Shown: in pieces, positions 572 to 64,000 of the stretch
Layout: every line of letters begins with the position of its first letter
Position numbering within the stretch: position 1 is the first letter of the stretch
From: Vitrella brassicaformis CCMP3155
Lineage: Eukaryota; Protista; Chromerida
Assembly: GCA_001179505.1 (NCBI GenBank)
Contig: CDMY01000221.1
Coordinates: 1 to 64,000 of the forward strand
Reading direction: 5' to 3'
Length of the DNA stretch: 64,000 bases
Translations under genes and position numbers: made by a program
The notes under the pieces: model-generated
Told to the model about the DNA's origin: nothing
Databases searched by the model: none
What the model saw: only the letters and a program-made list of their open reading frames with translations

Positions 572-3500
572 CTAATCCTTCTTGTTGGCCTTCTTGGGTT
601 TGGCCTTGGCCTTGCTGCGCCCCTTCCGTGTGCTGCCCTTGAGCTCTAGCTTCAGCACCAGTGTGTTCATGAACGAATCATCTACCCCGTCCCCATCCAC
701 CTCATGGTCACTCTCCAAAACCGTATAGGTGGCCCCCACCCGAGCCACACACTCGACACAAAACGCAGCGAGGGCGGGCTCAGGGTGCTCTGGCCCGTAC
801 CAACCGTAGTTGTGCGCACCCATTCCCTCTTCGTCCGAGTCGACATCCCCAACGAGGTCGTCTGTCGACATGTCGACCGTCAGCGACACTCGTGTGGGGC
901 GAATCGACAGGATGAGAGAGAGCAGATTGCGCACGTGGTCTCTCTTGAGCCGTGCACACCCCCCATCGACAGTGAGGCTATTGACTTGAGGGTACGATAG
1001 ACCAGCCTCGCACTCGTGTGCGGCGTCGGCTAGCATGTCTGCTGTCATGTCGTCTATCTTGACCTCTAGCTTGTCGAGGGGGTGGTGCAGACCAGAGAAG
1101 TACGATATGCACCGGCTCAGGTCGCTCAGAGCCGAGACGAAAAAGCTCGCCTCTCTCACACGCTTCAAACTACCCATCAGCCCCTCCAGCTTGCGGGCAG
1201 CTGCACCCGACGGCAGGCCCTCGTGTCGGTTGCTATTGCTACGCAACACTTGAGCGTGAAAATGCTCAATCGATGGCAGACAACGGCTGTTGCCTTCCTC
1301 GTGGGCCTCGGTCGTGTCGAGGAGGAACTCGGGGATGCTGTTGACCATCTTGCTCGCAGGTGGTGGCCGGTAGGCGTCCTCCGCCCCGACGGCGAGGTGG
1401 GTGGCTTCCGGGAACGACAGCAGCGCTCCCCACGTCCCGTGGAGAGGCGAGCCGCCACACGACAACGCTACCTGACAGTGGATGAAATGGACACACAGAG
1501 ACACGCACAGACACATGTTCCATCCTGCCAGCCACCAGTTGCTCCAGCAGTCAGCCGCGCAGCGCAGCTCAGTGTTTACTGACTGACCTTCTTGCACGTG
1601 CTGGTGACCTTTTCCACCGTCTCAGCCGTGACGCCGTGGGGTGCAGGCGGGGCCTCCGGCACCTCTGTGCTGCAGTCGATGACAGTGTCCATGATCCACC
1701 CTTTGCCTTCGTCGCTGAATGCCTCCCTGTTGTCCGCGCGCGGCAACCACTCGATGCTGCACGCCACGCCGGGCGCCCACGTGAGCAGGTCGGGCAGGGT
1801 GAAATGGTTGGGGCCGCTGCGGTCCGTCAGCTGTCGGCTGAAGTCGGCGCCGAGGGTGAAGCGGTGGTTGAAGGTCAGGGTCTTGGGCACACCTGACGTG
1901 TCATGCATCGCAGACAGAACGGGAAGGAGCACCAGATGTGATTGGGAAGCATAGCTGGGCGGCGGCCGGCCATTTGTGTCTTCTCCCTCTCCCACACCCA
2001 CCCAGCTCACCCACCTTTCATGTTATCTTTGTTCCAGTTGGTGTCGAGGGCGGCCTTGAGCAGCCCGAGGGAGTCGTACACGGGCGTCTTGAGCACACTG
2101 ACAGACAAACAGACAGAGGGGGAAGTGGGCGTGGCGTCTGTGGATGTATACAATAGACACATACCTTAGGTCGGTACTGGTCTCGTCCTCGGACTCGTTG
2201 TAGCTGAGTCGGATGTCCTTTGCGCTCAGGATGGTCAGCCCCTCGATGCTTGTGAGCTTGGGGCACTTGGCTACCGCAGCGGTGAATGCTCGCCAGTCAG
2301 CCCCGTCCACCGTGTCGATGTTCCAGGCCTTGACGCTCGTCAGCTGCGGCGATGTGGACACGATGTGTGTGAGGGACGGGAGCAGGGAGCAGGCCCTGGA
2401 GTTGTGGCGTCGGAAGCAGACTCGGCCCTTGTCAGCCTCGGCGTACACGTGGCCGACACTCAGCTTCTCCAGCGCAGAAAACACCCAACCGCTACTCCTG
2501 CAGCTCAGCCAGCCACACCCACACAGGCACACAGACATGGCGGATGTGGGTGGCCTGTGTGGCGTGGTCTCTCACTTACATGAACTTATCGATCCACTCG
2601 TCGTTCGTGACCCGCAGCTCCTCGACGCTGTCGAAAACCACCACACTACTCGATGCCGCCGGGCCCTTGACCTTGTCCCGTCGACCGTATTGCCCTGTGG
2701 GGGGATTGTCGATGTGGATGTGCTTGAGTGTCCACTTGGACGCCTCGAGCAAGTCGACTGTGAAGGGGATGAGGCCTCGGGTGGCGTCGATGTTGACCGT
2801 CTGCAGCCTACCCTGCAGCACAAACGAACGATACACACGACCTTAATGGTACAGTTATGTCAGTGCGCTCTTCATCCGGCCCTCCCCTCTCTCACCATTC
2901 GCTTCTTGAGCTGCGGTGTGTATTTGCCCTTGTCTTTGTCTTTGCTCGGCTTGCTCTTCGGGGACGGGGGACGGGAAGGGTCTTCATCCGACTGCATGAG
3001 CAACCAACGCCATGCACGATGCAGCCATCCATGACGCACTCTCCCTCCCTCCCTCCCTCCATCCCTTTGTCTGTCCGTCTGTCCCTCCTCACCTCCTCAT
3101 CGGTGTCGCGTGCCGCTGGTTGCTTGATGCTCTTCCAAACGCTATGCTCGCCCTTGGTAATGGTGAGGTCGCGGTACATCCCCGTAGTCGTGTCGGTGGC
3201 CTTGGTGTGCATGTCCTTGCATATCGCTGAGATGGGCAGCCGCTCGATGGTGGTGAAGAGTGGGCTCAGCTGCGATAGGTGGACGGCCTCCAAGTCACAC
3301 AAACCAGCCACCTGACACAAACCGCACACACGCAGGGGATATTCACCCGTGTGCGACATGGTGTGCATCTCTTGGTGTGGCGGTGCACCGTACCCACCTT
3401 GCGGCCGGCGGTATCATCATTGCCCTCTTGCATGCTGCCACCGTCACCAGGCGAGCGAACGTCCTCTGAGCAAACAACACAACACCAGGCAAGGATGCAT

Positions 3501-3613
3501 GTGTTTTGCAGGGGCGTGGTCTGGTCCCCACCTGCCCAGCCCAGCCCACCCGCTTCGTTGTCATGCGATGCGGTGTGGCCTTGTTTCTTGCGCTTCTCCG
3601 CAGGCGCCGACAT
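572..3613 (-). CDS. Multi-exon hypothetical protein, probably a lineage-expanded LRR-like family; basic C-terminal tail
   Basis: Coding-like ORF blocks separated by repeat-rich introns: ATG 3613 (MSAPAEKRKKQG), ~3110-3310, 2576-2815, ~2167-2480, ~1585-1915, and a long terminal exon to stop 572 ending STRKGRSKAKAKPKKANKKD. LxxLxL-type segments (LEKLSV, LTSIEGLTI, LDKLEVKI). No family recognised with certainty. Confidence 0.7.
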
Positions 3614-38555: not shown

Positions 38556-38855
38556 NNNNNNNNNNNNNNNNNNNNNNNNNNNNNNNNNNNNNNNNNNNNN
38601 NNNNNNNNNNNNNNNNNNNNNNNNNNNNNNNNNNNNNNNNNNNNNNNNNNNNNNNNNNNNNNNNNNNNNNNNNNNNNNNNNNNNNNNNNNNNNNNNNNNN
38701 NNNNNNNNNNNNNNNNNNNNNNNNNNNNNNNNNNNNNNNNNNNNNNNNNNNNNNNNNNNNNNNNNNNNNNNNNNNNNNNNNNNNNNNNNNNNNNNNNNNN
38801 NNNNNNNNNNNNNNNNNNNNNNNNNNNNNNNNNNNNNNNNNNNNNNNNNNNNNNN
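38556..38855. other. Assembly gap (300 N)
   Basis: N run; all three gaps are the same length, so the size is a placeholder. Confidence 0.97.
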
Positions 38856-40622: not shown

Positions 40623-40922
40623 NNNNNNNNNNNNNNNNNNNNNNNNNNNNNNNNNNNNNNNNNNNNNNNNNNNNNNNNNNNNNNNNNNNNNNNNNNNNNN
40701 NNNNNNNNNNNNNNNNNNNNNNNNNNNNNNNNNNNNNNNNNNNNNNNNNNNNNNNNNNNNNNNNNNNNNNNNNNNNNNNNNNNNNNNNNNNNNNNNNNNN
40801 NNNNNNNNNNNNNNNNNNNNNNNNNNNNNNNNNNNNNNNNNNNNNNNNNNNNNNNNNNNNNNNNNNNNNNNNNNNNNNNNNNNNNNNNNNNNNNNNNNNN
40901 NNNNNNNNNNNNNNNNNNNNNN
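40623..40922. other. Assembly gap (300 N)
   Basis: N run. Confidence 0.97.
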
Positions 40923-44269: not shown

Positions 44270-45700
44270 TCAGACGCCTGCCAATAGTTGAACAGCAGGA
44301 TGGCCGCACGAATCAGCCACACCTTCCACCTGCAGACAGACAGACAGACAGACAGGGCAAGCAAGGGCATCGATTCCTCCTTCTATGCATTCACAACGCG
44401 CACGAGCACCTACCTCTTTCGGCGTTGCTGGTTCTCGGCTTCGTTTTGCAGCGACAGACTCTTCCTCAGCGCCGCCCCCTGCACACACAACCAACCAGNN
44501 NNNNNNNNNNNNNNNNNNNNNNNNNNNNNNNNNNNNNNNNNNNNNNNNNNNNNNNNNNNNNNNNNNNNNNNNNNNNNNNNNNNNNNNNNNNNNNNNNNNN
44601 NNNNNNNNNNNNNNNNNNNNNNNNNNNNNNNNNNNNNNNNNNNNNNNNNNNNNNNNNNNNNNNNNNNNNNNNNNNNNNNNNNNNNNNNNNNNNNNNNNNN
44701 NNNNNNNNNNNNNNNNNNNNNNNNNNNNNNNNNNNNNNNNNNNNNNNNNNNNNNNNNNNNNNNNNNNNNNNNNNNNNNNNNNNNNNNNNNNNNNNNNNCA
44801 CCCCGACAGAGAACGGTGTACGGTATGTCATGTTGTGTGTGCCTGGGGTCCGTACGGTACGCACCTCTTCCCTTCGTTCATCGATGAGCCTCTCGATGTC
44901 CCTCTGGAGCATCTCTTGCTCTTCCTTCAACACATCACACCAATACTGAATGAACAACACACACACACGCGCCTTCGCTAACGCGTCAACACAGGACAGC
45001 ACAGGACAGCACAGCACAGCACAGCCAGCCTCTCTGTGAGTCGCTGGCTCAGTCACTCACTGACCGGCTGCAGTCGTCTTGGTGTGGCGGTTAGGATGCG
45101 TCGTCTGAGGTCCCGCGTGGCCTCCTGCATTCTCTTGCGAGCCTCGCCCTCGAACTCGGGTGACGCGCCCAACACGACGGCAAAGGCCTCTTGGAACTCG
45201 TCGCTGCTCCGCTCGCGCAACGCCTCAGCATACAGCCGGAAGTAGTGCTCGAGCTCCGACGACAGCCGCGCCAAAATGGCATCCTCATCCAGCCGCATGT
45301 GGTGCCTCTGTCTGCCTCTTTGGCTGTGACGCAGCTGCGATTGCGATGACAGTAGTGCGGCTGCTCGCGAGCGGACTTTGTCGATGAGGTCTTGGAGCGT
45401 CGAGCACAGCTGCACTGCCAGCTGCTCGGGCGTGACGGCCTGGGCGAACTCCACTATTGCCCGCCGGGTGTCGTCCATGGCCTCGATGATATCCCTGTCG
45501 TCAAATACCCCACCAAGGACCGCCGTGTGGTCTGATTCAGCAGGAGGCGAATGCAGATCCGCACATAGTAATGCAGGTGAAGCAGAGGGTGGGAGATGAC
45601 GTAAGCCGACACTGCAAGCGGGGCTGTTGATGGGTGCTCGTGGCCGCGCCAGGGAACAATGCAGGCCGGGGAGCTTCGCAGCTTCAGCGAGTGTGTCCAT
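44270..45700 (-). CDS. Hypothetical helical/coiled-coil protein spanning a gap
   Basis: Exons ~45531-45065 (DHTAVLGGVFDDRDIIEAMDDTRRAIVEF...EARKRMQEATRDLRRRIL) and 44945-44865 (YWCDVLKEEQEMLQRDIERLIDERREE) have canonical splice sites. Putative ATG 45700. Confidence 0.55.
44499..44798. other. Assembly gap (300 N)
   Basis: N run. Confidence 0.97.
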
Positions 45701-49051: not shown

Positions 49052-52000
49052 ATGGTGCGTCAAGGAGCACGTGCTGTGCTGCTGGTGGGTTGTGTGGCGC
49101 TGCTCCTGTCCTGCGCAGGGACCAAGAGACCGGCCAAGCTCCGCCACAACTCGGGACGAGGTGCGCACACTCAGATCTGTCAATGGATGTATCACACAAA
49201 CTCTGCGGATGGATGGATGTGACTCTCTCTCTCTGTTTGCTTGCGTTGATTGATTGACTGGCTGCACTAACTGCAGGGGCCGTCTCGTCCACTCACGGCC
49301 GGTCGCTGCAGGAGGAACAAGCGCATGATGCACCCGGTAAGTCTGTCATTCATGACAGACAGAGACTCATACACACACTTCCCTCGCTGTTTCTGTCGAC
49401 GTGCGTGTGTGGTGTGGTGCAGACCCCGTTTCTCCCTCGCTGTCGTCCCTCTCCCTCCCCCCATCCCCCGCCAACACGTCGACGCTCGCATTTCTCCTCA
49501 ACTTCACCCAGCCCGTCGCTATCACGGCCGACGCTATAATGCTCGACGGCTCCATCTGCCGCCCCGATGCGGTCTGCAGCGTCGACAGTGTCAGGCCGAC
49601 AGAGGGCAGCGATGTGGGGGACTTCGCGACGGTGTGGGAGGTGGAGGTCAGTGTGGGGGATGGAGAGGGGGTTTTGGAGGTTGACTTGGGGGCTGACATG
49701 GTGCTCGGCGAGGGAGGCAATGCGCTCAACAAGACAGCGTCGGAGCAGACGCTGCCAGTGGAGATTGAGATAGGTAAACAAACGTATTGGGTGACCACAA
49801 TGTGTGTGTGTGTGTGTGTGTGTGTGAATTTTTGGTGTGTGACCTTTGTTTGTCCTATCTGGATGCAGACACCGTCGCTCCATCATTGGTGTCGATGAGC
49901 AGCCCTCCCGGCCCCATCCCGTCTGCCACCTTCCCCATCACCCTGCACTTCAGCGAGCCCGTGGCCCTCAACGCCTCTGCATTCATCACGCTCACCGGCC
50001 CCTTGTGCGACACACGGTGCAGGTATGCGCGCGCCCAGCGTGTAAAGACAGACACGCATCGCATGTGTGTGTCGGTGTGTGTGCACAGTGTGTTGGGTAG
50101 CTCTGGTCTGCCTGCGGCTGATGAGGACGACCCCGAGTTTGAGGGATTTGCCCGCGAGTGGGAGGTGACCATCGAGGCCGACGAGGGCGACGGCAACCTG
50201 ACGGTGGCCGTGGCGGCTGGCGATGCAGCAGTGGTGGATAGGGCGGGCAACGCTATCAGGGATGGACGCATCGACAATGGCACGCTCACTGTCGCCATTG
50301 GTGAGTCTGCTCAGCAGGGTAGAAAAAAATCACACAACATGTTGTGTGATGTGTTGTGGTGGTGTGTGCAGACACCGTGGTGCCCACATTGGTGTCTGCG
50401 GACGCCCCTCAGGGCCCGCTGAGCACGCCCTCCTTCACCGTCAACTTGACCTTCTCCGAACCGGTGGCCAACATACAGCCAGAGGTGACCACAGACCGAC
50501 CCACAAACACACGACCAACCAACAGGCGCTCATTCTCCCCTCTCTGTGCTGTGTACCGTCAGCTGACAGGCGACCTCTGCAACGCCACGGCCGGCCTAAT
50601 GTGCAACATCACCTCCATAGATGCCTTCAGCCCCGACGGCGAGGGCTATGCGTCACGATGGTCATTTGTTGTGTCGACGGCTGGAGGTGAGGGCCGCGTG
50701 GTCGTCAGCCTGGTCAGCGACGCTTCCACCGACAGGGCCGGCCTGGCCCCCGCAGACGACGAAGACCCGACTGTCGTCACACGGATAATCGGTCAGTCAG
50801 TAAGGGGAGAAGGAAAGGGCAATGGTTGATTGCATTGCACCGACATGCTGCTGCTGATCTGGTCTGGTCTGGTCTGATGTGGTGCGGTGCAGATACGGTG
50901 GCTCCCTCTCTGCTAAACATGAGCACTTCTTCCCCTCTGGTCGCATCGACGTCCTTCGACGTGTCGCTGACATTCTCTGAGCCCGTCGCTGTCGACATAG
51001 ACCGAGTTGTGACACTGCGAGGGCCGCTGTGTGAGGAAACAGAGTGCCGCATTGCCGAGGTCGAGCCGGCCGGCGACGCCGATGACGACGATCTGTCTGA
51101 CCAGTGGGTTGTGACGGTGGAGGCCGGCGACGAAGACGGCCGCATGGAGGGCTCTGTCGTCATCGATGTCAACGAGAATGCGCTTAGGGACAGGGCTGGC
51201 AATGCTCTCAACGCCACTGCTTCGCCCGTCAACACAACAGGCTTCGAGCAATCCATCGGTAGGTACCCTCCCTCCAAACATGCACACACAGACAGAGACA
51301 CCTTCTGGTGTCTGTCTGCAGATTCGGTGCCCCCCCGGCTGATGGCCCTCCGCGGGCAGCGCGCCAATGCCACCAGCCAGACGATCGCCGTCAACGCGAC
51401 GTTCTCCGAACCAGTGTCGTTCGACTCCACGCGGATCGAGCTGTCCGGGTCGGCGTGCGACCCCACCAACTGCACCATCGGCGCTGTGCGCCCATTGGAG
51501 GCGGAGGGGGAGGAGGCTGAGGGCGATCTGTCGTCCGTGTGGCAGGTGGATATTGTGGCGGGTGAGGAGGAGGGGACGGTCTTCGCCCAGTTCCTGCCGA
51601 GCGTGTCGTCGGACGCCGCGGGCAACGAGCTCACCACCGACGGCGAGGAAGCACTGCTCGCCACCTTCTCTGTCGGTAAAAAAGGAAGAAACCACGCGCC
51701 TGTGGATGGATGTCCCATTTCCAATTTCCCATTTCCCATTTCTACTCGGTTCTGTCAGATGGCGTCAGGCCGCGGCTGTCCTTCCTGTCATTGCCCTTCC
51801 GTGTGCTCAACCTGACCAGCCTCACCGTCACGGCCGTATTCTCTGAACCTGTCGCCCTCAACGCCTCAGGCATACAGCTCTCCGGGTCGGCATGCGCACA
51901 AGACAACGACACGTGCCGCGTGGGGCCCGTTCGGCCCGCCGACGACACAATCCAGGCGTTCGCGTCGCGATGGGCGATCGAGGTAGTGGTGGGCGAGACG

Positions 52001-55000
52001 GAGGGGAGGCTGCGGATCGCCGTGCTGACCAGTGCTGGGGCGGACAACGCCGGGAATGAGCTGGAGGTTCAGACATTTGGCGGCGTGGATGGGGACATTG
52101 CCATGGCCATCTCCAGGACCATCGGTGCGTGGTCAATGCAGACAGACAGACAGACAGACAGACAGGTCGATAGGTCGATAGGTCGACGCTTTCTCAGACA
52201 TTATGTCTGTCTGTCCGTCTGAATATGGCTCGCGCAGACACTCGTCCGCCACGGCTGGTCTCCCTGACGGCGCCCGAAGGCCCGAGCCTGGACTCGGCCA
52301 CGATGCGCATTATAGTCACCTTCAGCGAGCCAGTATCCCTGCCGCTCGACTACTCTGCCAACGACACTGTGTCGGCAGCACTGCCGCCCCTGGCTGTGGT
52401 GGCGAGCGGGAGTGCCTGTGGGGAGGGTGGGGTCGGGTGCTATGTGTCGGCGGTGGATGCGGCGGATGAGGGCGGGGAGCGGCAGGAGTGGCTGCTCAAC
52501 GTGACGGCCGTCACGGAGGGCAATGTGACGGTGCGGCTGGTGCCGACGCAGATACGCGACAGGGCCGAGAACGGGCTGCGGGTCAACGACACGGAGGGAG
52601 GGGGAGACGACATGATGGTCTTCTCCAGACAGATCGGTGAGACTTGATACGAGCGACAGGAGAAAGATTTATCCATCCACCGACCATGGAAATGCTACGC
52701 TTCGATTTGATGCAGATCTGACGGGTCCGTCGATCACCCTCAGCAGCACAGTACCGGCCGTCACTTACGCCCCCAACTTCACCGTCACAGCCGAACTCAC
52801 CGAGCCATGCGACACCCTCACAGCCGACTCCCTCACTCTGAGAAACGCCCGGCTACTCAGCTTCGACGTCGACGAGTCGGGTGTGAGCATTGAGATGCTG
52901 GTGGAGCCCATCGCTGGAGGGGCTGTGAGAGTGGGCTTCCCTGCCGGCGCGTGTCAGGACAGTGCCGGAAATGACAACTTCCCGAGCACGGTGGTTTCCA
53001 CCACATATGGTCGGCGGGTGGGACGTAATGAATGTCATCCGTCATCCGTGCATGCCACTGTCACTGTGTGTGTGCTTCGTTCGGTCCGTGCAGACGATTC
53101 GATGCCGCAAGTGGAGGTCGCTCTCGCTATCGACACCGACGCCCTACCCACCGACGCGTCAGATCGGCCGCTGACCCGCAACGCCACTCTCCCACTCAGT
53201 CTGACCTTCTCTAGACCGCTCTATGCCACGGAGGCGCCGCTGCTCAACGTCAGCAATGCCAGAGTGGTGGAGGGCTTTGAGTTTGAGGACGGGTCGACCG
53301 ATGTGGATGGCGTGCTGCAAGCCGACGGCCAGGGGAATGTGAGCATCGGTGTGGCTGCGGGGGTGCTCCAGGACGAGTACGGCCGCCCCAATGACGGGTC
53401 CAACACTGTCGTGCTGATCTATGGTATGTATGTCTTAAACACCCTGACTGATGCGCTGATCTGAGTGCCCCCTGTCTGTCTGTGTCCTCCCTCCGTCCCT
53501 TGTGTGTGTGCAGACTCTGTCCGTCCGGTGCCGTCCCTTTCCACCACAAGCACGTCGCCGTCCACCACCCCAACGCCCTTCGTGGTGACCATCAGCCTGA
53601 CCGAGCCCATGGCGGACTTGAACGAGACCGACGTCATCATCACCAACGGCACCCTCCAATCGTTCACACCCAACACAGAGAGGGGCGAGAACGTCTCCTT
53701 TTCGGCAGCAGTGGTCCCCAACGTGACTGACGGCGAGTGGGGCGCGGTGGAGGTCAGGGTGCGGGAGGGCGCTGGGAATGACGTGGCAGGGAACCCCTCA
53801 CAGGCCAGCGGCAGTCTCGTTATGCAATATGGTGGGCGACACACGCACAGCAGAGCACAGCACAGCACAGCGCAACACACCGCAACACAACAGAAGGGAA
53901 TCGTGTGTGTATGTGTTTGTTGTACGTACCCGTGTAGTGCCGAAGGTGAGGTTCACGACTGCCTGGCTCACCCCGACGGCGTCAGTGCGGCCCGTCACCA
54001 CCCCCAATGTGTTCCATCGGCTGGCGATAGCCGCCAGGCCCTTCTCCATGACCGTCAACGGGACCTCCCTGACATCGAGCGTCCCACAGCTCCGCACCAC
54101 CAACCAGCACCGCACATACGCCGCCCTCTTCCGACGCAGCGGAGACATCTCTTGCGCCGACGGTCTTGCAAACGCATCCCGCCTCCTCTCTCCCCCCGTC
54201 CAGTGCGTCCCATCTGACGACATCATCCCCTCCACTGTCACATGTGGGCCCTTTGAAATGGACTCGGCGGCTTCCTATGAGCTCTGTGTGTGCGATGCCG
54301 TCGAGGACTCGGCATATCGGTGCAACGGCAGCGACTGGTCGGCCTTCAGCCACGGAGCGCGTAGCCTCCAAAGCGGCGAGGCCGGCACCCTCAGCGTGCC
54401 CCGAGGCAGCGTCGAGCTGGAGGTGGGCGACTCGGGCGTCCCCAATGCCAAACTGACCATCACCGCACCGGCGTCGAAGTCTCCCAGCCTCTTGTTCGTC
54501 GGCACGTCGGTGTTCCTCACTTCAAGCCCCAGATGCGACGACATGGGCGGCAACGGCACGGTGGCGCGGCGGGCCAGCGCCCTCTGCTCGCGGATCCGGC
54601 GGCACTCTGACGACCTCCTGCACGACGTGTCTTGCAGCTACGAGCTGGACGAGTACCCGCCCCCGGGGAAGTACACCATCTGCTGGGGCAACCCCCACAC
54701 ACAGCACTTCATCACCCTCGGGCCAATCGACACTTTCAAGATCCTCCCCAGTGCTGCCTCGTTTGCCTGCCGTCAGGCGCTGCAGCGGGCTGACGTCGTC
54801 AGCGTGTGCAGTGCACGGGTGCCTTCCCGTCTGCTGCCGGAGCCATCGGCTCTCGTCCTGTGCTATTCCCAGTGCAACCTCCCCGCCGGGTCGAGGTCTC
54901 AGCGCATCGGCTGCCCCCTGCCTGAGTCGACGTCAGGTGCGCGGCCGCCCCTGCTGTCGGACCCAATGGCGTGCATCAATGTGGAGCCGCCGCGGGTCGT

Positions 55001-58000
55001 CGGCTCGTCACTGTGGAGCGATCTGGGTGGAATACACATTGACTTCGACGTGGCTGTGGGGCCACTTGCAGCAAGCGCCGTCCCAACAGGCAGCCAAACC
55101 AACGGCAGCAGCCCTGCGGTCGATTGTGGTGCACTCCTCCCTCCTGAGCTGCTGAGTGAGCTGGGTAGCGATCCCAGATGTTACTGGGCTGCCGGAACGC
55201 GTCTTGAGGTCGCCTTAGGGTGGAATGCGACGTTCGGTGCTGGTGGTGGTGGTGAGAGAAATGCGACCATCTTGCCAGGCCGTGTTCAGAGGCTCGATGC
55301 GGCCAGGGACGTGCCGACGGTCGAGTGGGTGCAGAACGACGAGCAGAGGCTTACAGCCCGGGTGGAGCTGCCTGCTGCCCGGCCGCACGTGTGGCTCTCT
55401 GCCCCAGCGGTCATCCCCGCGTGTACGGGTGTGGATGTCTTCGGTGAAGCCTCGCTTGTCGGCCCTGGGAGGCGGTTTGCCCGAGTGGAGTGGTCATGCC
55501 ACGTCAGGACTGGCGGCAGTGAGGGCGATGGTAGCTACCACGGCACACACGAGTGTCCCGAAGAGCTGAAAGAGGTCTTCCACAACGCATCGGCTGCCCA
55601 GCGAATGATCCTCAGTGTTCCCCCTGCCATGACCGACCCTGCCCTTTTGCGAAAGGGCTTTTCCTCCACTGCAGGGGATGGTGCTGATGGCGATGGCGTG
55701 GCTCTGGAGGTCTCGCTGGTCGTCGAGAACTTCCTGGGATGGCAGACAAACGCCACGGCTGTCATCAACGTGTCATCAACGGATGATCCTGTGGCCGTCG
55801 TGCGCCCCATGACGCCTCAGAGCATCGTCAGTGCTGCTGGGGACAAGGTATCCTTTGAGGTGGCGGCGTTCGCTGCGACCAAGGGCAACTGCTCGGAGGC
55901 CTCCACCGGGCGGTGCCTCACCGACATTCTTGCTGCCCGGCTGCCCGTCGACGTCGAGTGGGTGTTTGCCGATGGATCCCAGATGGGCGGCATGACGCGC
56001 CGACCGAGGGTCTCCTTCTCGCCGCAGGAGTCAGTCAACATCTCGGCTCGCATCACAGTCAGGAGCGACCCGACAGCTGTGGCGGAGGTGCCCTTCACGG
56101 TGACCATCAACCACACGCAACCGCATCTTGTCATCGAGGGCCCGGCGCGTGTGGCGGTTTCCTGCCCGTTCACACTCACTGCTGTATCATTCCCAGAGGA
56201 CCGCCGGCAGTCGCCTGCCTACGCGTGGAGCTGCAGATACAACAACACAGCAGGGGAGAGCTGCTTCGCTGACCCAGAGAGAAATCCGCTCGGCAATGCG
56301 ACTGCAGCGTCTGTGGCCATTGATGCGGTGTTGTTGAGACGGGAGGGCCTGTATGTCTTTGGGGTGCGGAGGGGTGGGGGAGAGGAGGGTGAGGGTGATG
56401 GTGATGGTGGTGCAGGGGGGTTTGTGGAGCATCGTGTGGCTGTAGTTCGGTCACGGTATGCGATGGGCGTGGCGAGGATGGGGGACATGCAGAGACTGCA
56501 GATGAGTGTCCAAGGGCGAATCAACATGAGGGCCGAACTCGACGTGACCGAACAATGCCAGCTCCCGGTAACCCCACCACGCCACACACACACACACACA
56601 GAGAAACAGAGAGAGAGAGAGAGATACTCGTGGGGCATATCCTAGATGCATCCATCCCTTCCCTCAGGCTGACGTGCTATGGTCCTGGGAGGTATCCCGG
56701 CTCCCCGCCCCATCCCTCACCTCCCTCCCCCCTCGCAGACTCCCACACACACTCGTGACCTCCTTCCCACCCTCATGGGCCTCCACCGCACCCGCTCCCA
56801 CCATGAAGGTCTACGGCCGGCTGGCATCCAACACGCTGGCGGCTCCGGCGTGGTACAGCTACGCGCTGGTGGTGTCGGGAGCCGACGGGGTGGCGCTGTG
56901 GCATCACGAGTCGGCGCCCTTCGTGGTGCACGCTGCGCCTGTGCACGGGGAGGTCCGGGTGCACCCTCACCAAGGGGAGGAACTGTGCGCGGCGTTCCGG
57001 ATGCAGCAGGGAGGTAGGCATGCCATGGCATGCATATGCATGTGTGTGTATGTCATGTCATGTCACTATCCATCCATCCATCCGGTTGTGGTGTGTGTGT
57101 GTGTCTCTATGTGTGTGCAGGTTGGGGCACGAGCGCAGGGCCTCTTGAGTACTCGTACGCGCGGCGGCTGGTGGTGGATGGTGAGGTGGACGTCAAGTCA
57201 GAGGTCCCGTTGAGCAGCTGGTCGCCAGAGGCTGCCTTGGTGGTGCCGCTCACAGTGCCCCCAGGCATGCCCAACGCCACCTTTGTCATCGTGGGGCGGG
57301 CCAGGGACCGATTTGGCGGCATTTCGTAACCTCACACCACTCACCTGGATGGCTGGATGCATGAGGCACGTGATTCATTGGTGTGAGTGTGTCTGTGTGT
57401 GTGTGTGAGTCAGTGAGGCGGCTGTGTTGCCCCGTGTGGTGGTCACCCGTCGTGTGCTGAGCCAGGAGGACGTCTCGTCCGCCCTCGACCTCGCCAGCGC
57501 CGAATCTACACCGCCATCAGGTGAATGAACCAGCCCCCCGCCCGCCATCCAGATCGATCGACCACGTGTGCTGTGCTTGATTCATCCATGCAGTCGCCCT
57601 AGGACTGCTCATCAGCGCCGCCGGCTCGCTGCAGGACACCGAGGAGGCGGAGGCGGCCAACAAGACAGCCGACGCTGAGAAGGAGGTCGGTCCCAGGGTG
57701 CCGTCTGAGGCCGACCGTGCTGTGAGTGTGAAGCTGCTGTCGAGCCTTGGGAGTGTGGTTCAGCGGCAGACGGAGGGCGAGGAGCTCACCGACGGGTCAG
57801 TGGCGCTGCAGAGCGACGCCATTGGCAACGCAGTCGTGGCCGTCGACAGGAGGGGCACTCTCGACAAACCCAACTCCAAGAACGTACGTACGTCAGACAG
57901 CCACCCCACCCCACCGACAGACAACGGGAATGTCTGTGTGCAGGTACTGAACACGATGGACACCTCTCTCAGCGGCGCCAAGCGTGTCGGCGGTATGGAG

Positions 58001-61000
58001 CAGAGGGCGGCCGGCAACCTGGTGGACGCCAGTGTGCGCATCCTCCAGCGGCAGGCCCCCAGCAGACAGCCGGTGTCGCCGTCGAGCAATAGCACCGCGA
58101 CCAAGGCCGTGGAGGCGGCCCGGCGACTGCAGCAGGAGGTGGAAGACCAGCGAGCCATGGCCAAACAGCTCGTCGGGGCCGCAGGGAACGTCGGTATGTT
58201 ATGTGAGGGAAGGGAAGCACGCCGAACGTGTATGTTATGTGGGTGGTGTTGTGTATGTTATGCGTGTGTGCAGCTGAGCTTATGGGTAAGCGTCTCAAGA
58301 AGGGCAACAAGGTCGTCGTCGAAAAGCAGGGCCTCTCCGTTGCTGTCCTCGCAGACGTAAGTGACGAACGAACAAAACCCTTGCCACGACTAACTCAACA
58401 CAACGCAATGCACACACAGCAACAATCTCTCAATCTCTCTCTCCTTCATGTCATGTGTGTCATGTGTGTGGTAGGACCCGAGTCGCCTGCTAGCGCGTGG
58501 CGGCACCACCCTGCCCACTCGCAGTGGCAAGGTGTCGCTACCGTCGCTGGCCTCCCTGGACACCCCCGCAGCCCGGCGGGCGGCAGAGGAGGGACCCAAC
58601 GGCTGTCGTGCCTCGGCTAAGGTGGCCGCCAAGACAGTGGCGTGGCCTGCCAATCCATTTGGATTGGGGGAAGCAGCCGGGCAGTGGGGCGACACGGCCG
58701 TCGGGGCTGATATGCTCTCCATTTCTCTGAGCCAATGCGACGTACGCGACCAATGAGCGCCACGCATGTGTGTGTGTGTGTGTTGTGATGCTGTCTTTCT
58801 TTCTATGTAGGAGGACCTGCGCGTGCACAACCTCTCAGAGCCCATCAGGATAGTGCTGCCCATCCCCCGCCCCCAGCCGTCCGACGCCGCCCTCGCCTTC
58901 GCAATCGACCTCAAACGTAACCTCACCATACAGACGTGGCGGCAGAACCTGACCCTGACCGAGGAGGACCTCCCCCTGCCCCTCCCCAACATCACCACCA
59001 TGTCCGTCGACCAGAAGCTCGCATGGGCCAGCGACCTCTCGGCCATCAACCGGTCCATCGCCGACCCCACGGCCATCAGGGCACTGAGGTCCCTCAGCCT
59101 GTCCGTGGACCCTCGTGTGTGTGCCTTCTGGGACGAGGAGGGTGGGAGGTGGTCGAGTGAGGGGTGCGTTACGAGAGGCGACCTGAGCAACGCCACACAT
59201 CTGGTGTGCGACTGCACACACCTGACGGACTTCTCGGCGCTGCTGGAAGTGGTGAGCTGGGTGGGGGGGCTGGGGGTGGAGAAGGATCTGCCAGCCATCC
59301 CGGTGTTGTGTTGTGTTGTGTTGGGTTGTTTGCTGCACGTTGCTTGCTAATTGCAGACGTGGGATGTGTTCAAAAATTTCGGCCAGGCTTTTGTGGTGTT
59401 GGCAGAGCGGGGGATCGAGGCCCTGATGGAGCTCAACCCCAACAACCTCGGCGTCTGGACGGTCTTCGCCATCACACTCATTCTCCTCGCTCTCATCATC
59501 TTGTGAGCAGCTCATATGCTATGCCCCCACGCGCAGCACCAACACGCACTCACTCACACACAGTTGCTGCGGGCGTGGCGTCTTGTGTGTGCAGTGCGTG
59601 GCGGTGGGACAGGAAGCACCCCCTGACGGACGAGCTGCTCAAGCGGCTGCTGCTGAGCGACGCCGCCATCCGGACCAAGTACCTCGACTACTTGGAGGCC
59701 AAAGAAAGACCCAACTGCTGTGTGCGAATATACAGGTGTCTAATGCATTTACCAACTTCCACTACACGAGCACCGCTTATTTTTTGTTCTCTGCATGCTG
59801 CTTACCTGTGTGTGTGCCTGTGTGTGTGTGTGTGTGTGTGTGTAGGTCTCTGCGTGCCCGGATGCGTGGTGACAAGGAGGTGCAGCTGCCGGCCTTCTAC
59901 CGCGACTGGGCCATGGCACGCGACCTCAGAAGAGAAGTCGAGGAGCTGGCCAGGACAGGAGACCCCAAAGCCCGACAGGTCAGTCAGCAAGCAGCAAACC
60001 ACACACACGCTCACACACTCACACACACAGACACAGACACGCCAGCACGCGCAGTCAGTCACTGATTGGGTGCACCTGTCTTCCCTCTCTCTTCCCCTCT
60101 CTCTCCCTCTCTCTGTGCAGCTGCGGAACTTGATGCGTCGCCACGAGACATATCAGGTGGCCCGTCGGGTGCACGAGCTCCCGACGCTATCCGAGATCCT
60201 CGCGGCCAAGATGCTTCCGCGCATTCAGCAGAGGAAGGCCACTAAGGGCCAGGCGGCGAGACACAGCTGGCCTGTGCTAAACAAAAGGGGAATCGGCACC
60301 ATGCCCATGCAGCCACAGGGGACCGTCGACAGCCTCTCCCCGTCTGCGACCATGGCCCCGACCGAGCCTCCCTCATCGAAGCTTGACAAGAAGAAGCTCT
60401 GGACGATGCGGTCGCTGGGCGGCGCACTGCAGCAGCAAAATTCACTGCGACTCGTCGAGAGCGGCCAACTGGAGGAGGTAACCCACCCCACCCACACACA
60501 CAATACCCAAACATAGAACGCCGCGCCATGCAATGCCATCGATGGTGTACTGTGTTGTGTTGTGTTGTGTTGTGTGTCAAGGCGGTGAGGTATCTGCACC
60601 GGCTGGCCGTCAAGAAGCAGATCGTCGCCGCAACCACTATCGGTGGGTCGGTACCCACAAGAAGGAAGGAACTCAGTCACATCGATCATGGCTGACTGCC
60701 TGCGTGTCGTCTGTATGTGTATGTGTGTGTGTGTGTGTATGTGTGTAGGTAAGCACTGGCGAGGCATTGCTGTCCGCCGTTCGCTGGGTGAGCTGGGTCG
60801 CGACGGCAAGCCCTCTCTGAGCGAGCCCGAGAGCGAGCATGATGGTGCCGACGCCGACATTGACGGCGTGCAGATCCCCCTCTCCCCCTCCTTCGCCGAG
60901 GCCGTCGCGCGGGACCTCTCGACCCTCATGGGAGGCTCCCCCTCCTCCCGATCCCTCCCACCCTCACTCTTTTCGCAATACATGGACGACGAACAGGGCG

Positions 61001-62843
61001 AAGCCGAAGACGCTGATGGCTGGGTAGATCTCAGACCTGACGTCGGCAGCAAGGCGGTCAGCATGACCAAGACGCGATCTGAGCCGACCGTCCGTTTGTC
61101 GGCGGCCAGGCGGGGCGTGCTGGGCAAGAGTGGGTCGTCAGGTCTGCAGCAGCCGGCCGCCGGGGACGACGAGGCCGACGTGGACGACGGCAGTGGGCTG
61201 TTTGGCAAGGAGTTCGCCGGTGTGGAGGGCACGGCTGTGAGGGTGAGGGTGGTGCAGCTCGATGACTATGATCTCGATCATCCAACTGACGACGACGACG
61301 AGGGCGGGGTGGACACCTCCCTTCTCATGCGCAGCGGCACCTTCGGGGGCCCTCGCGTCAACGCCATGAGGCCACTCGCACACCATCGCGTCACCCGGGA
61401 CCCCTCGTGTGTCGTCTGGGAGTCCGCACATATGCCTGCACGCATCGACGTCACCGGCAGGAAACTCTCAGTATGCGAGCAGCACACACACACACACACA
61501 CAAGACCATACCCCTCCCGAACAACACAACACAAACACGCACACACATTTGCTGTCTCTCTATCGCTTTTACTTTCTCGCCAGCTGTCGGTCCGCGAGCC
61601 AGAGCTTGGTCCGTCGCTGCAGAGCACCTGGTTTGACAAGCTGTTCGCCGTGGGGTGGGTGTCCCAGGGGTTGCAGATGGAGCGACAAGGAGGGCGAGAT
61701 GCAGAGGGGGTTGGCGGTGGTGGCCAGCTGGGCCGGTACGTCATCCCCATGGGGGCGGTGGAGGCATGCGACAAAGGGCAGGACGGAGAGGAAGAGCAGG
61801 TGGACGAGTTTGGTGGTGGTGATGGGGATCATGATGATGCGACTGCTGTGGTGAGCGGGCAGAATGACAATTGCAGCGAGGGCACTTGGTGCGATGGATG
61901 AATGTCTGATTGTGTGTCTATCTATTGCTTCCCCCTCTCTCCCTCTCTCTCTCACGTCAGGTGCACGTATCGCTGGACTTCTTGTCTCGTCAGTTTGTGT
62001 TGCGCTGTGAGTTCGACCATCCCGACGACGCCACAGCATTCACCACGAGCGTCGACCGCGCCCTCCACCCCCACCAACACAACCATTGCCTCCCCCACCA
62101 GCCCCTCACCGACTCGCCCAACGGCGGCGACAGGACCTCACGCACACACACCACGGCAGCCTCGCTCGCCCTCGACAAGGACGAGGGCGATGGCTATGGC
62201 GACGAGGCCAGCAGACACAGGGAGGCGCGCGCGGACGACAAAGACACAGAGGTGGCGAAGGAGAAGGACAAAGAGAAGGAGGTGGAGCTGCTTCCCATGG
62301 TGGCCGACGAAACGGAGGTGCGCCACGCCGTCAAGAGGCTCGAAATCGCCGACTGGTCGCCTTTCAGGATCGCACGGTGAGAGAAGAAGGAGGCAGCAAG
62401 GCCCGTGTGACGACGACTTCCTTGCTGTGTGTGCTTGATTCAATTCATGCGTTGTGATGCGATGCATGCGATCTGCCAGGGCCGTGTTGAGCCGTGAGCA
62501 CCCGGTCCCCAACGCCTTCGGGGTCGACGTGAGCCTCAGCCGCGTGCAGCGCACCCTGTTATTCGCCGCGGACGTCATGGGCGGCTTCATGTTCGACGCT
62601 CTGTTCTTCACGGCGGCCCCTTCGCCCCTGGGAGTCAAGAGGGGGCAGATCAGTGGGGTGGGGGAGAAGTGGGGGGCCGGTGAGGAGGAGGGCGAGTTCG
62701 ACATTGTGCTGCTGGACTTCAACTTTGGCGACGAGAGCTCGCGGCTCAGGCTGACCTGGAAGGTGGTCGTGGCCACCGTCATGAGCCTCATACTTATGTG
62801 GTCAGTATGCAGCCCCTGAATGAGTCCATTGGTTGTCAATCAC

Positions 62844-62882
<39 letters not shown>

Positions 62883-64000
62883 TGTCCGTGTCGGTGTGTG
62901 TGTGTGTCTGTAGGCCGATAGAGCGCTTCTTCGACTGGCTGTTTGTGAAGGAGGTGCCGTTAGTCAAGCCCTCCAAGTACGGCGTCGCGAGCAAGGGCAA
63001 GGGCAAGGGCAAGAGCCGCAGCACCAAGCTCGACGCGGAGGAGGCCGAAGTTGAGGAGACCATCCTGTGGGGCATCGACCAGCAGCAGAAGACCCGTGGC
63101 TACAAGTTCTACCTCACCGAGGACGAGAAGGCCGCGTGGGTCCGCCGCACAAGGCGCAAGGAGTGGGTGGGTGTGTCGGTGGTGTCGCTCTTCATTGTGA
63201 TAGCGCTGTTCTACCAGCTCATGTTTGCGGCCCTGCTGGGTGAGAATCTGCAGAACGTGTACGACTTTGTGGCGTCCAACGGGCTGGCTGTCCTGGAGGA
63301 GCTCATCCTCTGGCCCCTGCTCGTCTCCCTCGTCACCATACTCATCGTCACGTACGCAACGAAGCACCTTCACTCCGCGGGCCTTCGCCGCACTCTCTTT
63401 CTGTGTCCGCACTCTCTTTCTGTGTGTGTGTTTGTGTGGCTGTGTGTGTGCAGCATTGCTCGCCACACGAGAGCATTTGACTGCTGCCTGCGTCTGTGCC
63501 CCCGGATGACCGACTTCAGCAGAGCGATCGCCAGCGATGAGGTGGGTGGGTGGGGGGACATACACATGTATTGGGGCACACACACACCGACACACAGCAC
63601 AGGTAGATGAATGGCGCCAAGATCGATCTCTCTCTCTCTCTCCCTGTGTGTGTGTGTGTGTGTGTGTGTTGTGATGTGTGCATGCAGGCCGAGTTGTTTT
63701 ACCTGCAGGAGGCCGACGCCGAGCGGATCGTCAAGAACCCCGGCGAGCTGCGCAGCTACACCACCATGAAGGACAAACACAGCAGCAACACCAAGGCCAA
63801 GACCAAGACCAAGACCGCCAAACACAGCAGCACCAGCAGCACCACCAGCACCAGCAAAAGCAGCGGGAAGGGTGAAGGCATCGGCAGGCGGATCCACAGC
63901 AGGCAGACGACAGTCGGGTCCATCCACTCATCGACCACACACTCGCACACCCACACACATACACATACACTGACGCTGTCTGGGGGCTCCTCGGCCGATG
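49052..64000 (+). CDS. Giant polycystin-1/REJ-like receptor: signal peptide, 10 bacterial-type Ig repeats, Cys-rich region, REJ, GAIN/GPS, multiple TMs; 3' end beyond the window
   Basis: ATG 49052 MVRQGARAVLLVGCVALLLSCAG. Repeats D-x-V-x-P...F(S/T)EP...D-x-AGN. REJ-like VVENFLGWQT and PHLVIEGPA...YAWSC. GPS CAFWDEEGGRWSSEGC...CDCTHLTDF (~59119-59232). TM1 LGVWTVFAITLILLALII. PKD1-like REHP...LSRVQRTLL...MFDALFF, and further TMs at ~62760-63360. The frame is still open at 64000. Confidence 0.88.
49423..53831 (+). repeat. Array of ten Ig-like (Big-type) coding repeats, each delimited by phase-1 introns
   Basis: Single-exon units 49423-49773, 50893-51258, 51322-51675, 51759-52124, 52238-52636, 52716-53009, 53094-53423, 53514-53831. 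Two units each have one extra internal intron (49869-50300, 50372-50791). Confidence 0.85.

What the first reader, a model, noticed from the sequence alone, without database searches (positions are those of the whole stretch)
49052..64000. Giant polycystin-1/adhesion-receptor-like protein with bacterial-adhesin-type Ig repeats in a unicellular alga
Seen: signal peptide and an RSLQE pro-type site, ten ~100-130 aa repeats (e.g. DSVRPVPSLST...PFVVTISLTEPMADLNETDVIITNGTLQSF...FSAAVVP...VEVRVREGAGNDVAGNPSQAS), a Cys-rich region, REJ-like segments, a textbook GPS, and polycystin-like TM motifs. Established: the D-x-x-x-P...FSEPV...D-x-AGN pattern is characteristic of bacterial surface-protein Ig-like (Big) repeats; REJ-GAIN-TM defines PKD1/PKDREJ, whose animal ectodomains use PKD, LRR and C-lectin modules. 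Inference: a chimeric mechanosensory or adhesion receptor built from a bacterial-type repeat, possibly for substrate, coral-host or gamete recognition. Seven repeats add Cys pairs (G-x-x-C...C), suggesting eukaryotic disulfide adaptation.
Basis: partly seen in the sequence, partly recalled or inferred. Interest (0 to 1): 0.75.

Follow-up and report, generated by a model that had tools for sequence, protein, structure and literature searches.

The report
Channel-less polycystin-like receptor with bacterial-type Ig rod
This is one real, already annotated 35-exon gene of the alga Vitrella brassicaformis for a 3,889-residue surface receptor that carries ten bacterial-type (Big_12) Ig repeats on a self-cleaving GPS module and five membrane helices. 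It is an unusual but not unique member of a multigene family in this genome, and it lacks the PLAT domain and ion-channel half of true polycystin-1.

Summary
Window 49052-64000 (+) is most of one gene, with its stop at C221:64084-64086. The public model P0001 has 3,889 aa in 35 exons.

**What the protein contains**
- A signal peptide.
- Ten Ig repeats, each a phase-1 exon cassette. Seven carry a Cys pair.
- A region with 24 cysteines.
- A sub-threshold REJ match (20.2 bits against a cut-off of 25).
- A textbook GPS (Pfam E 2e-13, with an intact HL|T cleavage site).
- Five TM helices, with a roughly 680-aa loop between TM1 and TM2.

**The repeats are bacterial-type.** They are true Big_12 (PF19078). 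Apart from the query's own protein, the only hits in the length range searched were giant Big_12 proteins that look bacterial from their co-domains and contig sizes.

**It is not a polycystin-1 or an adhesion GPCR.** I found no PLAT, PKD_channel or 7tm_2 match. Likeness of the membrane part to PKD1 could not be shown by sequence, profile or fold.

**It belongs to a family.** The TM2-5 module recurs at 15 or more Vitrella loci, one of them in a gene with Pfam-positive REJ and GPS. Four or more paralogs also combine Big_12 with this chassis.

**Prior reports.** The scan has already reported five or more "channel-less polycystin-1-like" receptors on other DNA of this genome. What is particular here is the Big_12 array.

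The parts
49052..49165 (+). Exon 1: start codon and signal peptide (aa 1-38)
   Evidence: Mapping of P0001; hydrophobic N-terminus, Kyte-Doolittle 1.96
49282..49335 (+). Exon 2 (aa 39-56). It holds RSLQE (aa 45-49), which fits both an RxLxE and an S-hydrophobic-x-E type processing motif. Processing is unproven.
   Evidence: the motif reading is from general knowledge and was not tested
49422..49772 (+). Ig repeat R1 (Cys-pair type), phase-1 cassette exon
49868..50299 (+). Ig repeat R2 (Cys-pair type). It has a 66-nt in-frame internal intron at 50021-50086.
50371..50790 (+). Ig repeat R3 (Cys-pair type). It has a 78-nt in-frame internal intron at 50485-50562.
50892..51257 (+). Ig repeat R4 (Cys-pair type). 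It was folded as a beta-sandwich (pLDDT 75, pTM 0.70).
   Evidence: (Big_12 partial match, E 7e-4)
51321..51674 (+). Ig repeat R5 (Cys-pair type)
51758..52123 (+). Ig repeat R6 (Cys-pair type)
52237..52635 (+). Ig repeat R7 (Cys-pair type, longest)
   Evidence: (weak Big_5 match)
52715..53008 (+). Ig repeat R8, canonical Big_12
   Evidence: Pfam PF19078, 28.0 bits, E 2.6e-6
53093..53422 (+). Ig repeat R9 (divergent)
53513..53830 (+). Ig repeat R10, the best Big_12 match
   Evidence: Pfam PF19078, 37.9 bits, E 2.2e-9. ESM Atlas score 0.97 to bacterial Big_12 clusters.
53937..56567 (+). Giant exon (aa 1219-2095): a linker, the Cys-rich region (aa ~1291-1758), and the first part of the REJ-like region
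   Evidence: No Pfam or PDB hit for the exon alone. Apart from the protein itself (P0001), only one weak relative (P0002) among 1.84 billion representatives.
56034..57326 (+). REJ-like region (aa 1918-2279), spread over three exons
   Evidence: Pfam REJ 20.2 bits, E 2.5e-4, below the cut-off of 25. Co-linear matches to the REJ-positive ORFs of C27 (E 7.3e-5) and C204.
57415..59251 (+). Presumed GAIN region (aa 2280-2758, six exons), ending in the GPS
   Evidence: Only the last ~65 residues match GAIN domains of adhesion GPCRs. The rest is inferred from its position.
59117..59242 (+). GPS motif. The predicted autoproteolysis site HL|T lies at 59219-59227 (aa 2748-2750).
   Evidence: Pfam PF01825, E 2e-13 and 3e-12; alignment to ADGRG6
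59357..59736 (+). Stalk (TDFSALLEV...) and TM1 (aa 2789-2807) in two exons
   Evidence: The paralog at C453 has GPS and TM1 in one ORF (E 2.8e-10).
59847..62377 (+). Most of the ~680-aa charged cytoplasmic loop between TM1 and TM2 (the loop begins in the preceding part). It occupies the place where PKD1 has PLAT. Six exons.
   Evidence: No Pfam domain, no PLAT match on the contig, composition
62481..62801 (+). Exon with the family motif (L-x-R-D/E-H-P-V ... Q-R ... A-L-F-F), TM2 and TM3
62915..63352 (+). Exon with the basic loop, TM4 and TM5
   Evidence: C27 E 6.7e-8; C317 E 3.6e-5
63455..64000 (+). Cytoplasmic tail exons, including the family motif P-x-x-x-D-F-S. The last exon runs to 64083 on the contig, with the stop codon at 64084-64086, beyond the window.

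Best explanation
The gene encodes a giant, heavily glycosylated cell-surface receptor. It belongs to a Vitrella multigene family built on a constant base and a variable outer part.

**The constant base.** A REJ-like region, a GPS-bearing (presumed GAIN) autoproteolytic module, TM1, a long cytoplasmic loop, and four more helices (five TM in all). This base resembles the front half of polycystin-1, but without PLAT and without the channel half.

**The variable outer part.** In this member it is a rod of ten Big_12 Ig domains of bacterial type. Seven of them arose by tandem duplication of one Cys-loop-bearing, phase-1 exon cassette.

**Likely mechanism (inferred).**
1. The signal peptide takes the ectodomain into the ER.
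2. The GPS module cuts between L2749 and T2750. This gives an N-terminal adhesive fragment held non-covalently on a 5-TM C-terminal fragment.
3. Binding or pulling on the Ig rod displaces that fragment and exposes the stalk (TDFSALLEV...) as a tethered ligand for the membrane part.
4. The membrane part signals through its ~680-aa loop and ~160-aa tail, possibly to PKD2-type channels that are encoded separately.

**Shown here:** the domain content, the intact cleavage motif, the topology indicators, family membership, and the absence of any PLAT, channel or 7TM match.

**Inferred:** cleavage, tethered-agonist signalling, the ligand, and any channel partner.
For: - One gene: 35 phase-compatible exons identical to the public protein P0001.
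- GPS: E 2e-13 with an intact C..W..W..C..C.C.HLT.F pattern. The PDB hits are adhesion GPCRs and related GAIN/GPS-bearing receptors only.
- Topology: a signal peptide, five hydrophobic helices, and basic residues on the predicted inner side of each helix. There are 54 N-glycosylation sequons before the GPS and none after it.
- Big_12: over the Pfam cut-off. Excluding the self-hit P0001, the Ig array hits only giant Big_12 proteins (E 9e-119 to 3e-17). They read as bacterial from their co-domains (a T9SS sorting tail, dockerin) and from Mb-sized contigs. ESM Atlas scores 0.97 to bacterial Big_12 clusters. The R4 model is a beta-sandwich whose best, though weak, match is the bacterial S-layer protein SbsC.
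- Repeat history: R1-R7 form one clade, 96/91. All ten repeat exons use a cag| acceptor and a G|gt donor.
- Family: the TM2-5 module matches C317 (E 9.5e-10) and C27 (E 6.7e-8 and 6.3e-5). The C27 gene also has Pfam REJ and GPS upstream on the same strand. With the C317 module as query, about 15 further loci match.
- Big_12 on the same chassis: C453, C266, C440 and C439.
- Possible partners: PKD_channel sequences exist at 10 or more other loci, none on a contig that has a GPS hit.
Against:
- The REJ match is below Pfam's cut-off.
- Only the GPS end of the presumed GAIN domain has sequence support.
- Similarity of the 5-TM part to PKD1 TM1-5 could not be shown. phmmer of the TM exons and a 6-sequence family profile found no PKD1 chain in the PDB. 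The AF2 model of a paralog's module was too poor to use (pLDDT 49.8).
- TM2 is only weakly hydrophobic and contains two Asp.
- The TM1-TM2 loop of the public model may contain mis-called exons.
- The repeat tree does not resolve whether the Vitrella Big_12 repeats have one origin, or who the donor was.
Confidence: 0.6

Rival explanations
1. It is a structural adhesin or wall-anchoring protein rather than a signalling receptor. On this reading the Ig rod and Cys-rich modules tie the plasma membrane to the thick cell or sporangium wall, or to a substrate. GPS cleavage would serve only for shedding, and the 5-TM part would be an anchor.
For: - Bacterial Big_12 giants look like surface adhesins. 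They carry a T9SS sorting tail, dockerin and cadherin co-domains.
- The best structural match is an S-layer protein.
- No recognisable signalling domain was found in the loop or tail.
- The ectodomain is heavily glycosylated and Cys-rich.
Against: - A five-helix module with conserved juxtamembrane motifs is kept across 15 or more paralogs. That is more than an anchor needs.
- An intact GPS catalytic triad and a stalk are kept.
Confidence: 0.2
2. It is a true but degenerate polycystin-1 orthologue. On this reading the PLAT and channel exons exist but were missed by the gene model, or lie beyond the annotated stop.
For: - The module order (REJ-like, GPS, TM1, long loop, four TM) is that of the PKD1 N-terminal half.
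- The tail of the public model includes low-complexity (TH)n text that looks like intronic CA repeat.
Against: - The six-frame, exon-by-exon scan of the whole genome gave no PLAT or PKD_channel match anywhere on contig C221.
- Reading the frames by eye, the open frames downstream of 64.1 kb show no TM-rich exons, and what looks like another gene appears to start near 65.9 kb.
- No contig has both a GPS hit and a PKD_channel hit.
- The paralogs C317 and C27 show the same module ending after TM5 with the P..LDFS motif.
Confidence: 0.05
3. The Big_12-type repeats are not a bacterial acquisition. On this reading they are an old eukaryotic Ig-like domain that merely scores best with a Pfam model trained on bacteria.
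For: - The repeat tree is an unresolved polytomy of Vitrella and bacterial repeats. Well-supported branches do not force more than one origin, and no donor can be named.
- The word search saw only proteins of 2,139-6,806 aa, so shorter eukaryotic relatives were invisible.
- The exons are fully 'eukaryotised', with spliceosomal introns and host GC content.
Against: - All hits other than the protein itself carry bacterial co-domains or lie on Mb-sized contigs.
- All the ESM-Atlas clusters listed carry Big_12, and those with recorded taxa are 100% Bacteria.
- No paper in the library links Big_12 to eukaryotes.
Confidence: 0.15

Closest known systems
Polycystin-1 family (PKD1, PKD1L1-3, PKDREJ, sea-urchin REJ proteins)
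   Same: - A giant modular ectodomain.
- A REJ-like stretch just before a GPS-bearing (presumed GAIN) module.
- An intact HL|T site.
- TM1, then a large cytoplasmic insert, then four more helices. This is the same order and predicted topology as PKD1 TM1-5.
   Different: - No PLAT domain. A ~680-aa domain-less loop sits in its place.
- No six-helix channel-like half and no PKD_channel match. There are 5 TM instead of 11.
- REJ is below the Pfam threshold.
- The ectodomain uses bacterial Big_12 repeats instead of PKD, LRR, C-lectin or WSC modules.
- No sequence, profile or fold match to PKD1 was obtained for the membrane part.
Adhesion GPCRs (class B2)
   Same: - The GPS sequence is closest to those of ADGRG6, E5, D1 and L3.
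- An adhesive repeat ectodomain with a predicted tethered stalk.
   Different: No 7tm_2 match in the six-frame genome scan, though that search also found nothing in its control genomes and so does not show absence. Only five helices, and TM1 is separated from the rest by ~680 residues.
Bacterial Big_12 (PF19078) giant surface proteins
   Same: The repeat has the D-x-x-x-P ... (F/L)(S/T)EP(V/M) ... D-x-AGN pattern. It matches the family model over threshold, and the array aligns with 14-27 repeats in each bacterial giant.
   Different: - Here the repeats are split into spliceosomal phase-1 exons.
- Seven of them carry an inserted Cys-Cys loop.
- They are fused to eukaryotic GPS and TM modules.
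Other 'channel-less polycystin-1-like' receptors of Vitrella, reported by this scan on other contigs
   Same: The same GPS / TM1 / long loop / TM2-5 base with conserved motifs. I verified this myself for C317, C27, C439, C440 and C453.
   Different: The outer modules differ. The earlier notes describe WSC, RCC1-propeller, lectin and EGF types. This member and four or more paralogs use Big_12.

Membership tests
Polycystin-1 / PKD1-like / PKDREJ | REJ domain (PF02010) upstream of the GPS | tested here: inconclusive
   20.2 bits, E 2.5e-4, against a cut-off of 25. It covers aa 1918-2279 and profile positions 55-404. There are co-linear weak matches to REJ-positive paralogs: C27 (E 7.3e-5) and C204. 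No exon-level REJ hit on C221.
Polycystin-1 / PKD1-like / PKDREJ | GAIN domain ending in a GPS with an HL|(S/T) site next to TM1 | tested here: met
   PF01825, E 2e-13. HLT at aa 2748-2750, 39 residues before TM1. Only the GPS end of the presumed GAIN domain has sequence support.
Polycystin-1 / PKD1-like / PKDREJ | PLAT domain in the first cytoplasmic loop | tested here: not met
   No PLAT match in P0001 even at E 10, and none on contig C221.
Polycystin-1 / PKD1-like / PKDREJ | Eleven TM helices, with a C-terminal six-helix PKD_channel-like half | tested here: not met
   Five helices. No PF08016 match on C221. Read by eye, the frames downstream of the annotated stop show no TM-rich exons, and what looks like another gene appears to start near 65.9 kb.
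Polycystin-1 / PKD1-like / PKDREJ | Homology of TM1-5 to PKD1 TM1-5 | tested here: inconclusive
   phmmer of the TM exons and a family profile (A2) against PDB sequences gave no PKD1 chain. The AF2 model of the C317 module had pLDDT 49.8, and Foldseek found nothing meaningful.
Adhesion GPCR (class B2) | Seven-helix 7tm_2 domain directly after the GAIN domain | tested here: not met
   The protein-level scan gave no 7tm_2 hit in P0001, and only five helices are present. The six-frame genome scan for PF00002 also found nothing, but it found nothing in its control genomes either, so it does not show absence.
Big_12 bacterial Ig-like domain (PF19078) | Match to the family model over the gathering score | tested here: met
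   R10 37.9 bits, R8 28.0 bits, whole protein 40.8 bits, against a cut-off of 27. R1-R7 and R9 match only through the within-gene repeat alignment and HMM.
Vitrella GPS/5-TM ('channel-less polycystin-like') receptor family | Shared TM2-TM5 module with the motifs L-x-R-D/E-H-P-V, Q-R, A-L-F-F and P-x-x-L-D-F-S | tested here: met
   P0001 aa 3441-3760 against C317 (E 9.5e-10 and 3.6e-5) and against C27 (E 6.7e-8 and 6.3e-5). Further loci match the C317 module. P0002 from another assembly carries the same C-terminal motif.

The most novel reading that the evidence does not exclude
Vitrella keeps the two halves of polycystin-1 as separate genes. Many 5-TM REJ/GPS receptors and many PKD2-type channels are present, and no contig has a hit for both. 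The family could therefore represent the state before the fusion that produced the 11-TM PKD1. In this member the sensing rod would be a Big_12 module taken from bacteria and spread by phase-1 exon shuffling. That would be a metazoan-style way of building receptors, found in an alga.
Probability: 0.2. Interest if true: 0.7.

Novelty: new variant of a known kind. Interest (0 to 1): 0.45.

Why it matters
GAIN/GPS receptors are mostly studied in animals, although Arac et al. 2012 (PMC3321182) already found GAIN domains in Tetrahymena and Dictyostelium. This gene matters for three reasons:
- A chromerid alga, a free-living relative of apicomplexan parasites, has a whole family of such receptors that stop after five helices.
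- The outer module of these receptors can be swapped for a bacterial-type Ig domain arranged as shuffle-ready exons.
- The family gives a testable system for two questions: what the N-terminal five helices of polycystin-1 do without a channel half, and how domains of bacterial type are built into eukaryotic surface receptors.

It is not a one-off. The gene is already annotated, and sister genes have been flagged by this scan.

Tried and rejected
**Searches that found nothing useful**
- Word search of the 840-aa giant exon: no hit, because the length filter excludes the 3,889-aa self protein.
- Word search of the TM2-5 region: only the protein itself.
- PDB sequence searches of the giant exon and of R10: nothing.
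- ESM Atlas with the TM4-5 exon: only unnamed eukaryotic clusters, with low recognition.
- Literature searches for this architecture in chromerids, dinoflagellates or Perkinsus, and for Big_12 in eukaryotes, found nothing relevant.

**Approaches that failed technically**
- tblastx of the locus against two paralog loci was swamped by TG/CA intronic low complexity.
- MAFFT alignments of exon fragments to the C317 module were partly wrong (A1, A4, A5), and the alignment of P0001 to the module (A3) was scattered. A3, A4 and A5 were discarded. A1 was still used, as the least bad, for the fold job.
- The AF2 fold of the TM2-5 module was low-confidence, so its Foldseek list is meaningless.
More paralogs and the source of P0002 therefore could not be examined.

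**Readings rejected**
- Bacterial contamination: the gene has spliceosomal introns and sits on a 162-kb eukaryotic scaffold.
- Adhesion GPCR: there is no 7TM domain.

**Handling of the spliced model**
I gave the tools no exon model that I had joined myself. Searches were exon by exon by reference, or used the public database protein P0001.


Full report
**Source.** The window is scaffold C221:1-64000 of an assembly with 72,700,666 bases in 1,064 pieces. These are exactly the figures published for Vitrella brassicaformis CCMP3155 (PMC4501334). An earlier scan note names the same organism.

**Gene model.** Three-frame reading of 48-64 kb showed a long chain of open segments on the + strand. The exhaustive HMMER search with the largest exon returned the genome's own annotated protein, P0001 (3,889 aa, 100% identity). 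It found only one other protein among 1.84 billion representatives. Exact mapping places P0001 in 35 exons from 49052 to 64083. I gave the tools no exon model that I had joined myself. All searches used single exons by reference or the database protein P0001.

**Ig repeats.**
- Ten repeats of 98-133 aa occupy aa 57-1218.
- Each begins right after a cag acceptor and ends at a G|gt donor, so each is a symmetric phase-1 cassette. This agrees with the separate scan note s1-209583.
- R2 and R3 each carry a short in-frame internal intron.
- Pfam Big_12 (PF19078) is over its cut-off for R8 and R10, and partial for R3 and R4.
- An HMM built from the ten repeats finds 14-27 domains in each of six giant Big_12 proteins.
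- Those six were the only database proteins of 2,139-6,806 aa, other than P0001 itself, that matched the array (E 9e-119 to 3e-17). They read as bacterial from their co-domains (a T9SS sorting tail, dockerin, BatD, cadherin) and from Mb-sized contigs.
- The protein-language-model atlas puts R10 at 0.97 next to Big_12 clusters. Those with recorded taxa are 100% Bacteria.
- An AF2 model of R4 is a beta-sandwich (pLDDT 75, pTM 0.70). Its best match, which is weak (E 0.026), is the bacterial S-layer protein SbsC.
- R1-R7 each carry a Cys pair in one loop and form one clade with 96/91 support. R8-R10 sit in an unresolved polytomy with repeats from Vitrella paralogs and from bacteria.

In short, the bacterial type of the domain is well supported. 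Within-gene expansion by exon duplication is supported. The donor and the number of acquisitions are not resolved.

**Middle region.** The 877-aa exon (aa 1219-2095) has no Pfam or PDB match by itself and contains most of the 24 Cys found between aa 1291 and 1758. On the whole protein, Pfam REJ aligns aa 1918-2279 to profile positions 55-404, but at 20.2 bits, below the cut-off of 25. The same stretch aligns co-linearly with the ORFs of two other Vitrella genes that do pass the REJ threshold (C27, E 7.3e-5, and C204). 'REJ-like' is therefore plausible but not established.

**GPS.** PF01825 matches at E 2e-13. The PDB sequences that match this part are all adhesion GPCRs or related GAIN/GPS-bearing receptors (ADGRG6 E 6.6e-7, then E5, D1, L3). 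The four Cys, two Trp and the HLT triad are all present, so self-cleavage between L2749 and T2750 is predicted. Only this end of the presumed GAIN domain has direct sequence support.

**Membrane part.**
- Hydropathy gives TM1 (aa 2789-2807), a weaker TM2 (aa ~3497-3520), TM3 (aa 3566-3588), TM4 (aa 3671-3689) and TM5 (aa 3712-3730).
- About 680 charged residues lie between TM1 and TM2.
- Basic clusters sit on the predicted inner side of every helix.
- There are 54 N-glycosylation sequons before the GPS and none after it.
- Genome-wide six-frame scans found no PLAT or PKD_channel match on this contig, and no 7tm_2 match. The 7tm_2 scan also found nothing in its control genomes, so by itself it does not show absence.
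- P0001 has no such hit even at E 10.
- Read by eye, the frames downstream of the annotated stop show no TM-rich exons, and what looks like another gene appears to start near 65.9 kb.

The protein therefore fails the defining tests for both polycystin-1 (PLAT, channel half, 11 TM) and adhesion GPCRs (7TM).

**Is the 5-TM part like PKD1?** The order of parts and the predicted topology match PKD1 TM1-5. From memory, the motif before TM2 resembles the PKD1 'H-x-W ... R-x-Q-R' stretch, but that is only a lead. The tests all came back empty or unusable:
- phmmer of both TM exons against PDB sequences;
- a six-sequence family profile against the PDB;
- an AF2 model of a single-exon paralog module (pLDDT 49.8), followed by Foldseek.

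**Family context.**
- The TM2-5 module of P0001 matches a single 477-aa ORF at C317, 2.5 kb downstream of a GPS (E 9.5e-10 and 3.6e-5).
- It also matches two exons at C27, downstream of Pfam-positive REJ and GPS (E 6.3e-5 and 6.7e-8).
- With the C317 module as query, about 15 more loci match.
- Big_12 repeats lie upstream of this chassis, on the same strand, at C453, C266, C440 and C439.
- P0002, a 3,527-aa protein from an unrelated public read assembly, shares aa 1560-1759 (E 7e-13 pairwise) and the C-terminal P..LDFS motif, but has no HL(S/T).
- Earlier notes of this scan describe five or more other 'channel-less polycystin-1-like' receptors in this genome with different outer modules. I confirmed the shared base independently, but not their wider claims about dinoflagellates and Perkinsus.

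**Partner channels.** PKD_channel sequences occur at 10 or more loci, none on a contig that has a GPS hit. In this genome the receptor-like and channel-like halves therefore appear to be separate genes. These counts are lower bounds.

**Literature.** GAIN domains in Tetrahymena and Dictyostelium are known (PMC3321182). The Vitrella genome paper does not mention GPS, REJ, polycystin or Big-type domains. No paper in the library links Big_12 to eukaryotes.

**Verdict.** The sequence features are real and the gene is one unit. It works most plausibly as a self-cleaving adhesion-type receptor, but it is not a member of the PKD1 or adhesion-GPCR families as those are defined. The novelty lies in the bacterial-type Ig rod arranged as exon cassettes on a lineage-specific 5-TM base. 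That novelty is tempered because the gene is already annotated and has many sister genes.

Noticed in passing
window 49282-49335 (aa 45-49, RSLQE): The motif lies 22 residues after the signal peptide. It fits both the RxLxE (PEXEL/TEXEL-like) pattern and the S-hydrophobic-x-E pro-peptide pattern known from apicomplexans. It could be chance, roughly a few per cent for a window of this size.
   Followed up: no
window 50021-50086 and 50485-50562: The internal introns of repeats R2 and R3 are in frame (66 and 78 nt) and free of stop codons. Intron retention would therefore give longer but still readable isoforms.
   Followed up: partly
window 62838-62912, and most introns of the gene: TG/CA-rich intronic low-complexity elements. 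This 70-nt stretch matches more than 50 other contigs at 85-100% identity. Similar runs are what give the 'VCVCVC' and 'THTHTH' text in the translations, including the tail of the public protein model.
   Followed up: partly
window 38556-38855, 40623-40922, 44499-44798: Three runs of exactly 300 N (scaffold gaps or withheld stretches) upstream of the gene.
   Followed up: no
G000:C439:47000-51000 (-) and 59000-67500 (+): Two family members lie on opposite strands, with their 5' ends towards each other, about 8 kb apart. One has a GPS and the TM module. The other has Big_12 repeats and the TM module.
   Followed up: partly
Whole genome: No contig has both a GPS hit and a PKD_channel hit. In this alga the receptor-like and channel-like polycystin halves seem to be separate genes.
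   Followed up: partly
P0002 (public read assembly, 3,527 aa): A relative from other data shares the aa 1560-1759 module and the C-terminal P..LDFS motif. It carries DUF4215, a discoidin-like domain, NHL and WW instead of Big_12, and it lacks an HL(S/T) site.
   Followed up: partly
L003 66465-66911 (contig coordinates, + strand): About 2 kb downstream there are open frames that look like a separate small gene (the text 'MGKDVIVFCDVDCPPLMAKD...' and so on). I did not identify it.
   Followed up: no
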